A DNA stretch of 64,000 bases, taken from NCBI RefSeq assembly GCF_031769215.1, contig NW_026781945.1, positions 1,240,001 through 1,304,000 on the forward strand, written 5' to 3'. The notes beneath the pieces are model-generated. The model was given only the letters and a program-made list of their open reading frames with translations. It was not told the origin of the DNA and ran no database searches. This document shows positions 58,162-62,286 of this stretch, in pieces. The translations under genes were made by a program, and so were the position numbers. Numbering within the stretch: the stretch's first letter is position 1; the number at the start of each line of letters is the position of its first letter. The DNA is from Ylistrum balloti. Lineage: Eukaryota.

Positions 58162-58332
58162 TTGGTCGCTATAGTGACGCAGTCATTCACGTTTGGTCGT
58201 CGCCATTGACAGGCACATCCAGCTGTCCCGAGGACCTAACTTTCTCCCCAGGACATGACGCAGCACCTAACTACGTGTACCTGGACACGGGAGACATTCA
58301 AACAGTGCAGTGGGCGCTTAAGCTCTTCAGAG
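58162..58332 (+). CDS. V21a: first exon of the Crypton/DUF3504-derived cassette (not in the ORF track)
   Basis: Two in-frame phase-1 acceptors: tctttatgtag| at 58162 and ctaactttctccccag| at 58252. Ends IQTVQWALKLFR G|gtgggt, matching the T..WA...F..FL motif that starts DUF3504-type domains. Confidence 0.72.
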
Positions 58333-58429
58333 GTGGGTAAAACATATATCCTTTCCTTTATGTTTTCTTCTGTCATCACTGTACATTATGTGTAGGTAAT
58401 ATGTTAGGACCCCATGGAATTACCTGTGC

Positions 58430-59710
58430 CTTTACTGTAGGTGATATGTAAAAACTGATCCACTAGCTGTCCCATTTACTGTAGGTAATACGGTAGTGAC
58501 CTGATCCACTAGCTGGCCCAATACTATAGGTAATACGGTAGTGACTTATCCACTAGCTGGCCCACTTACTATAGGTAATACGGTAGTGACCTATCCACTA
58601 GCTGGCCCATTTACTCTAGGTTATATGGTAGTAACCTGATCCACTAGCTGGCCCATTTACTGTAGGTAATAAGGTAGTGACCTGATCCACTAGCTGGCCC
58701 ATTTACTGTAGGTAATACGGTAGTGACATATACACTAGCTGGCCCATTTACTATAGCTTATATGGTAGTGACCTGATCCACTAGCTGGCCCATTTACTGT
58801 CTGTAATATGATAGAAACCTGATCCACTAGTTGGCCCATTTACTGTAGGTAATACGGTAGTGACCTATACACTAGCTGGCCCCTTTACTGTAGGTAATAT
58901 GGTAGTGACCTGTCCACTAGTTGGCCCATTACTGTTGGTAATATGGTAGTGACCTGTCCACTAGATGGCCAGTTTACTGGAGGTAATATGGTAGTGACCT
59001 GTCCACAGTCTGGCCCATTTACTGTAGGTAATATGGTAGTGACCTATACACTAGCTGGCCCATTTACTGAAGGTAATATGGTAGTGACCTGTCCACAGCC
59101 TGGCCCATTTACTGTAGGTAATATGGTAGTGACCTATACACTAGCTGGCCCATTTACTGAAGGTAATATGGTAGTGACCTGTCCACAGCCTGGCCCATTT
59201 ACTGTAGGTAATATGATAGAAACCTGATCCACTAGCTGGCCCATTTACTGTCTGTAATATGATAGAAACCTGATCCACTAGCTGGCCCATTTACTGTAGG
59301 TAATACGGTAGTGACCTATACACTAGCTGGCCCATTTACTGAAGGTAATATGGTAGTGACCTGTCCATTAGCTTGCCCATTTACTTTAGGTAATACGGTA
59401 GTGACCTGATCCGCTAGCTGGCCCATTTACTATAGGTAATATGGTAGTGACCTGTTCCACTAGCTGGCCCATTTACTGTAGGTAATATGGTAGAGACCTA
59501 TCCACTAGCTGGCCCATTTACTATAGGTAATACAGTAGTGACCTATACACTAGCTGGCCCATTTACTATAGCTTATATGGTAGTGACCTGATCCACTAGC
59601 TGGCCCATTTACTGTCGGTAATACGGTAGGGGCCTGATCCACTAACTGGCCGATTTACTGAAGGTAATATGGTAGTGACCTGTCCACAGCCTGGCTTTTT
59701 TGCTGTAGGT
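58430..59710. repeat. 45/46-bp tandem minisatellite, about 28 copies
   Basis: Unit actgtaggtaatatggtagtgacctgatccactagctggcccattt with variants. Confidence 0.96.
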
Positions 59711-60365
59711 TATGTGGTAGCAACTGAATGCACTACAGCAAAAAGAAATTCAAATGAAAAAATAAATTAAACAGTTTACAGATTTGGCTTTGATTCTACA
59801 ATCTCTGGCTGAATTAATTCAGATTTTTTGAAAGTCGAAATTAAATTTTAGTTTGCCTGAATCAAGGTAGGAAATCTGAATACAAAATGGGAGATATAGC
59901 TGATACTTTTAAAAGATGACTGGAAAAGTTGAAAGAACTTCATTTCTTAGATAAAGCAACAAACATCAACAAGGTGTGTTAGTTTTAAAAATTGAAGTTT
60001 TGATTTAAAAGTGGGATAGTTAAACCTTTGCTATAAAGTTTTTGGAATTTTTATAATTTATTTTGGATTCTATATGATTGCAGGTATTCAATCTTAATCA
60101 CAAAATCACTGATCATATCATCCTATACATATATCCAATACATAGAACATGAATTGTAAATTCTGATTTTTATTTTCCATCAGAATGATATTGCTATAAA
60201 ATGCATATGCTGTGGTATTGAAACCTTTAGATTTTGCCAAAACTATTAAAATATGTGAAAGATACAAGAAGAGCATGTATTCCCATAAATATTTTGGCCG
60301 CCATCTGCTTTAGTGATAATAATCATAGTAAGTACATCACTACAATATGTGTTACATTAGGTTTA

Positions 60366-61008
60366 TTTCTTTGATCCTATCCATGTAGGTAGGGCTTACT
60401 TCTTTGATCCTATCCATGTAGGTAGGGCTTACTTCTTTGATCCTATCCATGTAAGTAGGGCTTACTTCTTTGATCCTATCCATGTAGGTAGGGCTTACTT
60501 CTTTGAGCCTTTCCATGTAAGTAGGGCTTACTTCTTTGAGCCTATCCATGTAGGTAGGGCTTACTTCTTTGAGCCTATCCATGTAGGTCTTACATCTCTG
60601 AGCCTATCCATGTAAGTAGGGCTTACTTCTATGATCCTATCCATGTAGGTAGGGCTTACTTCTTTGAGCCTATCCATGTAGGTAGGACTTACTTCTTTGA
60701 TCCTATCCATGTAGGTAGGGCTTACTTCTTTGATCCTATCCATGTAGGTAGGACTTATTTCTTTGAGCCTATCCATGTAGGTAGGGCTTACTTCTTTGAT
60801 CCTATCCATGTAGGTAGGGCTTACTTCTTTGATCCTATCCATGTAGGTAGGGCTTACTTCTTTGATCCTATCCATGTAGGTAGGGCTTACTTCTTTGATC
60901 CTATCCATGTAGGTAGGGCTTACTTCTTTGAGCCTATCCATGTAGGTATGGGTTATATCTTTGAGCCTATTAATGGAGGTAGGGCTTATTTCTTTGATCC
61001 TATCCATA
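60366..61008. repeat. 33-bp tandem minisatellite, about 19 copies
   Basis: Unit ctttgatcctatccatgtaggtagggcttactt. The spurious minus-strand ORFs have an 11-aa period. Confidence 0.96.
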
Positions 61009-61315
61009 TAATTTGTTGCCTTTGTTACATAAATGTCAGTTGCTGCTAAAAGGCTCTTACCATCATTGCAGGATATGACATGAATTTTTAACTATTTTAA
61101 TCAACAAATAAACAAATTTAAAGATTTTTCATATTTATCTGTAAATCAATTTTGTTTTCATGTCAAAAGCAGTAAGCTATCCAAAAATAATCTTCTTGAT
61201 GATTTTCTAGAATATGAATAATTGAAGCACGGCGAAATCTTTTTTCATTTAACGGTATGAGGTTTCCCAACATCACTGTTTATGTATAATTTATGATGTG
61301 TTCATTTGGTTGTAG

Positions 61316-62286
61316 GATTCCTGGTTAGTTTGAACCTATCTGTCGACTTTGAAGCATTTCCCCCATCACAGCTCAATGATTGTCTGTCCAAGTTTTATCT
61401 CGAGGCCAAATCCAAACGTGGGGAAATGTATCATGTCAGCACACTCACTGATGTCCGCAACAGCATTATGCGTTACCTCTCCAATCTTACCCCAGAATGG
61501 AAGTCACACATCAAACACTCAAATGTATTCCAGCCTTCTAATAATCTACTTGACAACCTGCGAGAGAGTTTGTCAGAGACACCGATAAAACCCAAGGCTC
61601 CGATGAAGATCCCAATGACCTCATCGGATGTGTCACTTTTGATATCCTCAGGGTGTCTAAACCTTGATACACCGCTGGGCCTGTTCAGGAAGGTGTGGTA
61701 TGACCTCACACTGCATCTTGGATGTGGGGGACAATCTGCCCTGAGAGGACTAACACAGGATTCTTTTATCTTAGAAACAGACGAAAAAGGTAGAAAATTC
61801 TATAGGCTCAATCATAGTATCAAAATTCAAAGGGCAAGGTCATGTATGGAGATGCAGTATTGGAATTGGGATGGCCGCATGTATGAAATTATCGGTAACC
61901 CAATGTGTCCAGTTAAAAGCATGGACAAGTACCTGTCCAAACGTAATCCGAACAAAGACGCATTCTTCCAGCGACCAAAAGGGCATGTGCATCCAAATGA
62001 CATGGTGTGGTACGAGTCTCCAGTTGGGCATGGTGTTCTTGCCTGCCTCATGTCCAAGATGGCAGAAGATGCATGTCTGAGTCGTACATACACCAACAGC
62101 AGTATCCGAGTAACCATTGCGGACCTTCTGGAGAGGAAGGGTTACAGTGTGGAGACAACAATGGGTATGGACCCCCGAAACAAGTCGACCAAATCACTAC
62201 CTACCTACTCCAACGCGAAAGCTGATGATCTCCACACTAACTCTATTCTCATACATCAGATCATGTACCAAACAGACACTAACTGA
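61316..62286 (+). CDS. V21b: terminal exon encoding a DUF3504/Crypton tyrosine-recombinase-derived domain (ZMYM2-4/QRICH1/KIAA1958/KCTD1-like), probably catalytically dead
   Basis: Phase-1 acceptor tcatttggttgtag|ga. Motifs: QLNDCLSKFYLEAKSKRGEMY, LRGLTQDSF..ETDEKGRKFY, MYEIIGNPMCPVKSMDKYLSKRNP..AFFQRP, WYESPVGHG.L...MSKM...A.LSRTYTNSSIR. Confidence 0.88.

What the first reader, a model, noticed from the sequence alone, without database searches (positions are those of the whole stretch)
58162..62286. Catalytically dead Crypton tyrosine-recombinase domain (DUF3504) used as a variable cassette
Seen: splicing 58332 to 61316 gives IQTVQWALKLFR-GFLVSLNLSVDFEAFPPSQLNDCLSKFYLEAKSKRGEMY, restoring the domain N-terminus across a 3-kb intron holding two minisatellites. 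Where YR-type motifs are expected, the sequence has LGCGG (no Arg), TNSSIR (H of HxxR replaced by S) and no GH, while the Tyr is kept (SLPTYS). Established: DUF3504 in ZMYM2/3/4, QRICH1, KIAA1958 and KCTD1 derives from Crypton transposons, and KCTD1 combines it with a BTB domain. Inference: this is an independent BTB + Crypton fusion and a second transposon class recruited into the same array.
Basis: partly seen in the sequence, partly recalled or inferred. Interest (0 to 1): 0.72.

Follow-up and report, generated by a model that had tools for sequence, protein, structure and literature searches.

The report
Dead Crypton recombinase exon in scallop BTB gene
A scallop BTB transcription-factor-like gene can end in a two-exon module that is a transposon (Crypton) tyrosine recombinase with its active site destroyed. 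The module has been kept for a very long time across pteriomorph bivalves, so it is a clear but unstudied case of a transposon enzyme reused as an interchangeable protein ending.

Summary
The ORF 61316-62286 hits Pfam DUF3504 above its cut-off and folds as a two-domain tyrosine recombinase; the best structural matches are QRICH1, XerA and Cre. Arg-I, the Lys, His-II and His-III are lost in every ortholog. The Tyr present here is Phe in two other scallop genera and absent elsewhere.

The 58332>61316 splice is correct. The intron splits helix 1 of the N-terminal domain, sits at the same place in all seven paralogous cassettes and in mussel and oyster orthologs, and holds two minisatellites.

The genome is Ylistrum balloti. 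RefSeq XP_060086272.1 (LOC132565629 isoform X2, 926 aa) equals exactly 11303-11437 + 11715-12988 + 13194-13474 + 58213-58332 + 61316-62286. The upstream acceptor is therefore 58213, not 58162 or 58252.

Other isoforms of the same gene share the constant 560 aa and end in piggyBac-type fingers. In Pecten maximus they also end in BEN or C2H2 domains.

BTB+DUF3504 isoforms exist in scallops, mussels, oysters and a pearl oyster. The fusion is independent of vertebrate KCTD1b.

No RNA reads were available, and the function is inferred. The scan had noted a similar exon elsewhere in this genome.

The parts
11303..11437 (+). Constant coding exon 1 (start codon, first part of the BTB domain) of LOC132565629
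   Evidence: The exact exon set reproduces XP_060086272.1. RefSeq orthologs map here by tblastn.
11715..12988 (+). Constant coding exon 2: the rest of the BTB domain plus a long Ser/Pro/Thr/Gln-rich linker
   Evidence: PF00651 BTB hit. 100% tblastn match to P0181. Boundaries. S+P+T+Q fraction 0.37.
13194..13474 (+). Constant coding exon 3, ending in the shared phase-1 donor AAAG|gtaggt
   Evidence: Sequence. Boundaries.
46007..46153 (+). Optional 147-nt phase-1/phase-1 exon. In M. yessoensis isoform X1 its ortholog lies between the constant exon 3 and the DUF3504 mini-exon. Its use with this cassette in this species is not shown.
   Evidence: P0180 differs from P0165 by a 49-aa insert. The insert maps to 46006-46155 at 82% identity. 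Flanks are ag| and |gtaatt.
58213..58332 (+). Mini-exon of the cassette (40 codons): a disordered lead-in plus the first 15 residues of helix 1 of the recombinase N-terminal (core-binding-like) domain (…DIQTVQWALKLFR). Phase-1 acceptor and phase-1 donor.
   Evidence: Exact fit to XP_060086272.1 only with acceptor 58213. Orthologous junctions in P. maximus, M. yessoensis, M. californianus and O. edulis. Mytilus-type genomic mini-exon with donor AGAG|gtaagt. The helix spans the junction in the model of P0166:563-924.
58333..61315 (+). Intron, 2983 nt, containing minisatellites at 58431-59720 (45 bp) and 60363-61007 (33 bp)
   Evidence: TRF. DNA contigs of run X1 break inside the arrays and show a 12-nt insertion at 60982.
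61316..62286 (+). Main terminal exon: the rest of the N-terminal domain, the DUF3504 (dead tyrosine-recombinase catalytic domain), a conserved C-terminal helix and the stop codon TGA at 62284-62286
   Evidence: Pfam PF12012. AlphaFold model with pLDDT 93. Foldseek hits QRICH1, XerA and Cre. Catalytic columns. Purifying selection, pN 0.10 against pS 0.79.
63131..63136 (+). First AATAAA after the stop codon, a candidate poly(A) signal. Unverified.
   Evidence: Pattern scan. No RNA data.

Best explanation
The stretch 58213-58332 plus 61316-62286 is a two-exon alternative 3' cassette of the Ylistrum balloti BTB gene LOC132565629, giving isoform X2. It is joined in cis to the constant exons: the phase-1 donor at 13474 splices to the phase-1 acceptor at 58213.

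The cassette encodes a complete two-domain tyrosine-recombinase fold descended from a Crypton transposon (Pfam DUF3504). Its active site is destroyed, so it cannot cut or rejoin DNA.

It arose once, before the pteriomorph bivalve orders split. It was then duplicated into at least seven cassettes in two neighbouring BTB loci and is kept by purifying selection.

Inferred role: it is a non-catalytic targeting module, interchangeable with the piggyBac-finger cassettes of the same gene. BEN and C2H2 ORFs also lie in this array, and the Pecten maximus ortholog gene has BEN and C2H2 isoforms. The module would attach the BTB oligomerisation module and its long disordered linker to particular chromatin sites. 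Most likely (about 0.5) it does this by clamping DNA the way a recombinase binds its core site. Otherwise (about 0.3) it binds a protein-DNA complex, as the dead-recombinase protein QRICH1 does in Zincore.

Shown: the domain identity, the loss of the catalytic residues, the exon structure, and the annotation of the isoform in this genome and in other species. Inferred: expression in this animal and the binding function.
For: - **Domain identity.** PF12012 at 41.3 bits. A profile of homologs hits QRICH1 (E 1.3e-6) and XerA (E 0.0046) in the PDB, aligning HxxR, GH and Y. A model with pLDDT 93 matches QRICH1 (9hjt), XerA, Cre, Tn1549 Int and lambda Int at probability 1.0.
- **Dead site.** In 20 of 20 cassette-clade sequences His-II, Lys and His-III are gone. 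Arg-I is Gly here. Tyr is Phe in two scallop genera. By contrast, 48 of 75 more distant homologs keep the full R-E-K-H-R-H-Y set.
- **Exon structure.** All 7 paralogs have an AG acceptor at the identical position. Six paralogs, including the window's cassette, have a clear homologous upstream mini-exon ending G|GT in phase 1; the seventh (cassette at 80107) has only a weak candidate. The orthologs L029, L030 and L032 share the acceptor.
- **Annotation in this genome.** XP_060086272.1 sits on a 3,031,828-nt contig, the same length as C88. It equals the translation of 11303-11437 + 11715-12988 + 13194-13474 + 58213-58332 + 61316-62286.
- **Variable ending.** Isoforms X3 and X5-X8 of the same gene share 100% of residues 1-560; X3 and X5-X7 end in PF13842 domains and X8 shows no C-terminal Pfam domain. 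Pecten X2-X20 end in PF12012, PF13842, PF10523 or C2H2.
- **Age.** BTB+DUF3504 isoforms are found in M. yessoensis, P. maximus, four Mytilus species, O. edulis, Saccostrea and Pinctada. In Tegillarca, synteny with a zf-Tnp_2 ORF is kept.
- **Single origin.** 19 of 20 cassettes form one clade with SH-aLRT 96.
- **Selection.** pN 0.10 against saturated pS 0.79 in comparison with an 82%-identical ortholog.
- **No recent copies.** The best paralog in the genome is 38% identical.
Against: - No RNA evidence could be obtained for this animal. The only public run holding the exon is DNA, with contigs that cover the intron and show no joints. Use of the splice sites rests on RefSeq models and on conservation.
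- No binding function has been tested. The pI values of the cassettes are only mildly basic, 7.2-9.1.
- The Pinctada model joins the constant exon directly to the main exon, so the mini-exon may be optional, or that model may be wrong.
- One paralog (cassette at 80107) sits on a long branch outside the starred clade.
Confidence: 0.85

Rival explanations
1. The dead recombinase is not a direct DNA reader. It would be a protein-interaction or co-regulator module like QRICH1 in the Zincore complex, docking the BTB protein onto zinc-finger factors already sitting on DNA, or onto a SEPHS1-like partner.
For: The closest solved structure and closest PDB sequence match is QRICH1 in 'Zincore (SEPHS1:QRICH1) binding to ZFP91 on DNA', entry 9hjt. 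The paper is Bianchi et al., Science 2025, as listed in the references of PMC13538652. The net charge of the domains is only mildly basic.
Against: The other cassettes of the same gene are all classes generally regarded as DNA-binding (C2H2, BEN, piggyBac cysteine-rich finger), which suggests an equivalent role. Identity to QRICH1 is low (17%), and the cassette clade is separate from the ZMYM/QRICH1 lineage by taxonomy. Interface residues were not examined.
Confidence: 0.3
2. The DUF3504 exons belong to a separate gene with its own promoter between about 48 and 58 kb, and the RefSeq isoform is a read-through artefact.
For: There is no RNA evidence for this animal. The gap from the last piggyBac-finger cassette (47933) to 58213 is about 10 kb and rich in repeats.
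Against: The open frame leading into the mini-exon has no ATG, and the first Met of the main exon is residue 37. All seven cassettes start with phase-1 acceptors that match the phase-1 constant donor. Independent RefSeq annotations in five or more genera join BTB to the orthologous cassette. No CpG or GC rise is seen between 47.9 and 57.5 kb.
Confidence: 0.04
3. It is a resident Crypton transposon, active or recently dead, that happens to lie in an intron or downstream of the BTB gene.
For: Pfam DUF3504 also hits active CryptonA elements (PMC13465315). Many genomic DUF3504 hits elsewhere have large intact ORFs.
Against: The catalytic set is lost in all orthologs. There is a conserved intron inside helix 1. 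Orthologs sit at the same locus across bivalve orders. Purifying selection is strong. No copy in the genome is closer than 38%.
Confidence: 0.01

Closest known systems
KCTD1 isoform b (jawed vertebrates): Crypton-derived DUF3504 plus BTB
   Same: A catalytically dead Crypton recombinase domain and a BTB domain in one protein, made as an alternative isoform, with the DUF3504 largely within one exon (PMC3212892).
   Different: In KCTD1b the DUF3504 is N-terminal and the BTB is the T1/KCTD type at the C-terminus. It arose from a Crypton insertion upstream of KCTD1 in early vertebrates. Here the BTB is N-terminal, the DUF3504 is the terminal cassette, there are seven paralogous cassettes, and the lineage is pteriomorph bivalves. 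It is therefore an independent fusion.
ZMYM2/3/4, QRICH1, WOC (bilaterian DUF3504 genes)
   Same: Domesticated DUF3504 without the catalytic tetrad, fused to other host modules. QRICH1 is the best structural and PDB sequence match.
   Different: Those carry MYM fingers or a CARD domain, not BTB. They are single constitutive C-terminal domains, not interchangeable cassettes. Sequence identity is under 20%.
KIAA1958 isoforms a and b (vertebrates)
   Same: One gene with two isoforms that carry different DUF3504 domains (PMC3212892), so alternative DUF3504 endings are already known.
   Different: Two endings only, no BTB, and no other domain classes in the set.
Drosophila lola and mod(mdg4) loci (own knowledge; lola and TTK-type BTB are discussed in PMC11426971)
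   Same: Constant BTB exons are joined to one of many alternative terminal exons, each carrying a different binding module.
   Different: The variable modules there are C2H2 or FLYWCH fingers. The TTK-type BTB is arthropod-specific. mod(mdg4) uses trans-splicing from both strands, whereas here all cassettes are on the gene's strand. No dead recombinase is among the insect modules.
Active CryptonA transposons (DUF3504-encoding)
   Same: Same fold and the same Pfam family. The broader invertebrate homologs recovered here mostly keep R-E-K-H-R-H-Y.
   Different: The cassette lacks Arg-I, Lys, His-II and His-III. It has host introns, no start codon of its own and no recent copies.

Membership tests
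DUF3504 / Crypton-type tyrosine-recombinase domain (PF12012) | Profile match above Pfam's gathering score | tested here: met
   41.3 bits against a cut-off of 29.7, E 2.2e-10, residues 107-249 of the exon. The full-length orthologous isoforms also score PF12012.
DUF3504 / Crypton-type tyrosine-recombinase domain (PF12012) | Two-domain tyrosine-recombinase fold (helical core-binding domain plus catalytic domain) | tested here: met
   Model with pLDDT 93. Foldseek finds QRICH1, XerA, Cre, Tn1549 Int and lambda Int at probability 1.0, 28 hits at E<=1e-3. TM-scores are only 0.3-0.4, which I attribute to differing relative orientation of the two domains (not tested).
Domesticated (host) Crypton gene | Loss of the R-H-R-Y catalytic tetrad | tested here: met
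   Arg-I is Gly and His-II is Ser. Arg-II is kept. Tyr is present here but is Phe or another residue in orthologs. Lys and His-III are also lost. Residue mapping was checked against XerA.
Domesticated (host) Crypton gene | Orthologs at the same locus in distant species, under purifying selection, without recent transposon copies | tested here: met
   RefSeq isoforms in scallops, mussels and oysters. Synteny in Tegillarca and a Mytilus-type contig. pN 0.10 against pS 0.79. Best paralog 38% identical.
Active Crypton transposon | Intact catalytic residues and a self-contained ORF present in multiple similar copies | tested here: not met
lola / mod(mdg4)-type BTB locus with alternative terminal cassettes | One constant BTB part joined to many mutually exclusive terminal exons | tested here: met
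   Five isoforms of LOC132565629 in this genome (X3, X5-X8) share 100% of residues 1-560 with isoform X2 (the query, XP_060086272.1) and have different endings. X2 equals the exact exon set. This is annotation level only, not transcript reads.
lola / mod(mdg4)-type BTB locus with alternative terminal cassettes | Transcript evidence for the junctions in this animal | not testable with these tools
   The only run holding the exon is DNA.
lola / mod(mdg4)-type BTB locus with alternative terminal cassettes | TTK-type (arthropod) BTB domain, homology to the insect genes | not tested
   Only the generic PF00651 hit was obtained. The TTK type is reported as arthropod-specific (PMC11426971 title and abstract), so common descent with lola is unlikely.
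KCTD1b-type DUF3504+BTB protein | N-terminal DUF3504 followed by a C-terminal T1/KCTD-type BTB; vertebrate origin | tested here: not met
   The domain order is reversed: BTB at residues 25-125 and DUF3504 at 710-851 in P0166. The KCTD1b description comes from PMC3212892.

The most novel reading that the evidence does not exclude
The seven dead-recombinase cassettes may still recognise specific DNA sites, possibly descendants of Crypton recombination sites. Joined to an oligomerising BTB module, they could pair or loop distant sites without cutting them. That would give bivalves an insulator- or architecture-type factor family built from a recombinase synapsis module, alongside piggyBac-finger, BEN and C2H2 isoforms of the same gene.
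Probability: 0.12. Interest if true: 0.8.

Novelty: new variant of a known kind. Interest (0 to 1): 0.52.

Why it matters
Domesticated Crypton recombinases (ZMYM2/3/4, QRICH1, KIAA1958, KCTD1b) are disease-linked in humans, yet what the dead recombinase fold does is still largely open.

Here the same fold has been captured independently and placed in a position normally held by DNA-binding domains. It has been multiplied to seven diverged copies and kept across pteriomorph bivalve orders. This gives a natural series of variants for asking what a dead recombinase binds.

It also shows that lola-like 'one BTB, many endings' genes exist outside arthropods. They draw their endings from at least two transposon superfamilies, piggyBac and Crypton.

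The gene models are already in RefSeq as 'uncharacterized protein'. I found no paper describing this architecture.

Tried and rejected
- **RNA evidence.** The look-up of sequencing runs returned a single run of unknown kind. Laying it showed genomic contigs covering the intron at even depth, no joints and no informative loose ends, so it is DNA and says nothing about splicing.
- **Logan contigs.** The contigs carrying the closest orthologs, L029 and L030, are genomic, not transcripts.
- **Pecten DNA.** The look-up of encoding contigs for the Pecten isoform P0166 found no record, so no scallop-to-scallop dN/dS could be computed. The bivalve comparisons available have saturated synonymous sites.
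- **Paralog mini-exons.** Plain tblastn with the mini-exon peptide did not find them. A scan anchored on phase-1 G|GT donors did.
- **Acceptors 58162 and 58252.** Both are phase-compatible, but neither reproduces the RefSeq protein.
- **Word search length limit.** Under the word search's length limit (0.55-1.75 times the query), querying with the exon alone returned only short ORF fragments. The full isoforms came from the representative search and from region-restricted searches with database proteins.
- **Handling of the spliced model.** It was never sent to a search or folding tool. Exons were searched separately by reference. The exon join was checked only as a string comparison against the public RefSeq protein inside scripts. 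The junction structure was modelled on the natural Pecten protein P0166:563-924.
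Full report
**What is in the sequence**

The window is G000:C88:1240001-1304000 of a 648.5-Mb genome. On the + strand an ORF runs 61306..62286. Its in-frame exon part, 61318-62283, matches Pfam PF12012 (DUF3504) at E 2.2e-10 and 41.3 bits, against a cut-off of 29.7.

Upstream, an open frame ends in ...DIQTVQWALKLFR followed by g|gtgggt at 58332/58333. The main ORF is preceded by ...ttggttgtag| at 61315. Both sites are phase 1, so the join reads R-G-FLVSL.

The 2983-nt intron holds two minisatellites: 58431-59720 (45 bp x 28.5) and 60363-61007 (33 bp x 19.7).

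**The cassette is one of seven, and their shared structure shows they are exons**

Searching the whole genome with the exon found six more intact paralogous ORFs, 36-38% identical, all on the + strand of the same contig downstream of the window. I fetched 180 kb downstream.

All seven ORFs have an AG acceptor with a pyrimidine tract at exactly the same position, two bases before the W/F codon.

Six paralogs, including the window's own cassette, have a clear small upstream exon ending G|GT in phase 1. In five of them it carries a clearly homologous motif, T-x-K/R-R-T-x-R-D-V/I-x-F/L-I/V-K; in the window's cassette the corresponding motif is QTVQWALKLFR. The upstream exon lies 145 nt to 6.8 kb upstream. 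The seventh cassette, at 80107, has only a weak, poorly matching candidate. Phase-1 acceptor candidates precede each mini-exon.

The constant exon of the BTB gene ends AAAG|gtaggt at 13474, also phase 1. Neither the frame leading into the mini-exon nor the first 36 residues of the main exon contain a Met.

Three cassettes (61316, 71850 and 80107 in window-continued coordinates) follow the BTB gene that starts at 11303. Four follow a second BTB gene that starts about 46 kb beyond the window's end. Four paralogous BTB constant regions lie on this contig.

**The splice is conserved in other bivalves**

Genomic contigs carrying 82%- and 68%-identical orthologs have the same acceptor. A Mytilus-type contig has a mini-exon ...SAQINWGVKLFR with donor AGAG|gtaagt, about 680 nt upstream of an acceptor ...ttttcag|GA TGG.

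In a Haliotis homolog with an uninterrupted ORF, the same helix (...TSTAIRVLREYL...) is contiguous.

A model of the natural Pecten maximus protein segment P0166:563-924 places one continuous helix, residues 25-44 at pLDDT 77-97, across the mini-exon/main-exon junction. The first 19 residues are disordered. The intron therefore splits helix 1 of the N-terminal domain, and the join does restore that domain's N-terminus.

**The gene model**

The exhaustive representative search and two region-restricted word searches recovered RefSeq proteins that carry BTB at the N-terminus and this DUF3504 at the C-terminus (Pfam):

- Mizuhopecten yessoensis LOC110459952 isoform X3
- Pecten maximus LOC117336493 isoform X2
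- Mytilus californianus, M. galloprovincialis, M. trossulus and M. edulis isoform X4
- Ostrea edulis LOC125648339 isoform X1
- Saccostrea cucullata and S. echinata isoform X1
- a Pinctada imbricata GenBank model

One member of the Pecten 90% cluster is XP_060086272.1, LOC132565629 isoform X2 of Ylistrum balloti. It lies on a contig of 3,031,828 nt, exactly the length of C88.

Its 926 residues equal the translation of 11303-11437 + 11715-12988 + 13194-13474 + 58213-58332 + 61316-62286. This was an in-script string comparison only. With acceptor 58162 or 58252 the match fails. The Pecten and Mizuhopecten junctions (...GTFK-G-TSSCPED...) agree with 58213.

The window is therefore from Y. balloti, and the cassette is already annotated as an isoform, named only 'uncharacterized protein'.

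Five other isoforms of the same gene (X3, X5-X8) share 100% of residues 1-560; four of them (X3, X5-X7) end in PF13842 piggyBac-type fingers, and X8 shows no C-terminal Pfam domain. The Pecten gene has isoforms ending in PF12012, PF13842, PF10523 (BEN) and C2H2.

A paralogous cassette of the neighbouring locus is likewise used in M. yessoensis LOC110459950 isoform X4, in the order constant exons, mini-exon, main exon.

I could obtain no RNA reads. The only run that holds the exon is DNA.

**It is a recombinase fold with a dead active site**

The exon, modelled with 96 homologs, gives pLDDT 93. Foldseek returns QRICH1 (9hjt, Zincore on DNA), XerA, Cre/Tre, Tn1549 integrase and lambda integrase, all at probability 1.0.

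A profile of the homologs aligns its YTNH..R / GH / Y block to the HxxR / H / Y of XerA (E 0.0046) and matches QRICH1 at E 1.3e-6. This fixes the catalytic columns.

| Group | State of the catalytic columns |
|---|---|
| 75 more distant homologs | 48 carry the full R-E-K-H-R-H-Y set |
| 20 cassette-clade sequences | none keeps His-II, the Lys or His-III |
| Arg-I | Gly in the window copy and its orthologs; Lys in three paralogs; Arg in two |
| Arg-II | mostly kept |
| Tyr | at the homologous position in this species (SLPTYS); Phe in P. maximus and M. yessoensis; unrelated residues in mussels and oysters |

The domain cannot be an active recombinase, and the Tyr is not under selection as a nucleophile.

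Other blocks are strongly conserved: NPLGLFRKVW, an inserted MEMQYW.W segment, CPV.SM, FFQRPK, and a C-terminal helix S..IH...Y. Against an 82%-identical ortholog, pN is 0.10 while pS is saturated at 0.79.

**Origin**

In a maximum-likelihood tree, 19 of the 20 cassette sequences form one clade (SH-aLRT 96). It has a 'window-type' subclade (support 100) containing scallop, mussel and oyster orthologs, and a second subclade with five of the paralogs. The seventh cassette, at 80107, is on a long branch next to the clade.

Together with the shared intron, this points to one capture followed by duplication, before Pectinida, Mytilida, Ostreida/Pterioida and probably Arcoida split (taxonomy; Tegillarca synteny).

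Kojima and Jurka (PMC3212892) describe KCTD1b as an N-terminal DUF3504 followed by a C-terminal BTB, created by a Crypton insertion upstream of KCTD1 in early vertebrates. Here the order is reversed and the lineage is different, so the fusion is independent.

The same paper notes that KIAA1958 has two isoforms with different DUF3504 domains, so alternative DUF3504 endings are not unprecedented.

**How it most likely works**

The constant part supplies a BTB oligomerisation domain and a long low-complexity linker (S+P+T+Q fraction 0.37). The variable endings are otherwise DNA-binding classes.

I therefore read the dead recombinase as a targeting module. It most likely clamps DNA non-covalently as a recombinase binds its core site. 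Alternatively it binds a protein-DNA complex as QRICH1 does in Zincore (9hjt; Bianchi et al. 2025, cited in PMC13538652). This step is inference and nothing here tests it.

**Comparison and novelty**

The thing is a member of the DUF3504/Crypton-derived family and of the class of domesticated Cryptons. It works like a lola/mod(mdg4)-type isoform array, but common descent with the insect loci is unlikely.

Literature searches found the Crypton domestication papers but nothing on bivalve BTB arrays with DUF3504. Earlier notes of this scan had already flagged this locus and a similar DUF3504 exon on other DNA of the same genome.

I rate it a new variant of a known kind. It is solid and of moderate interest, and the gene models are already public.

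Noticed in passing
window 46007-46153 (+): A 147-nt phase-1/phase-1 exon (ag| ... |gtaatt). Its M. yessoensis ortholog (82% identity) is inserted between the constant exon 3 and the DUF3504 mini-exon in isoform X1 (XP_021368179.1). The first exon of the '46007-46789 cassette' can therefore act as an optional internal exon.
   Followed up: partly
G000:C88 1139622(-), 1245230(-), 1251730(+), 1350603(+): Four paralogous BTB constant regions lie on one contig, two on each strand. RefSeq lists dozens of isoforms for the neighbours (LOC132565634, LOC132565723, 'myoneurin-like' and others). DUF3504 cassettes of this clade were found only behind the two plus-strand genes.
   Followed up: partly
Downstream of the window: C88 1311850, 1320107, 1427869, 1435702, 1444616, 1455460 (main-exon starts): Six further two-exon DUF3504 cassettes. 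The last one has a 6.8-kb intron between mini-exon and main exon. The one at 1320107 is divergent (lacks the EM..W.W insertion, shortened C-terminus, long branch) and may be decaying.
   Followed up: partly
window 58446-62794: DNA run X1 differs from the assembly by 18 single-base changes, a 12-nt insertion inside the 33-bp minisatellite (60982), and a 2-nt insertion and a 13-nt deletion in the 3' flank. Only one change (61710 A>G, third codon position) lies in the coding exon. Contigs break inside both minisatellites.
   Followed up: no
P0015 (Mytilus edulis CAG2245790.1) and P0017 (Pinctada imbricata KAK3103686.1): The M. edulis model strings a piggyBac-finger cassette and two DUF3504 cassettes into one protein, a likely mis-annotation of alternative exons. 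The Pinctada model joins the constant exon directly to the main exon and skips the mini-exon; both junctions are phase 1.
   Followed up: no
window 62197-62283 (last about 25 residues) and the same region of all paralogs: A C-terminal amphipathic helix with the motif S-x-x-I/L-H-x-x-x-Y is conserved in all cassettes after the dead-Tyr loop (pLDDT about 97). By position it could correspond to the C-terminal helix that links protomers in Cre. This was not tested.
   Followed up: no
window 56000-57838, 48183-48737, 63467-63972: Further long minisatellites flank the cassette (38-bp unit x 48 just upstream of the mini-exon). The array's long introns are generally packed with tandem repeats.
   Followed up: no
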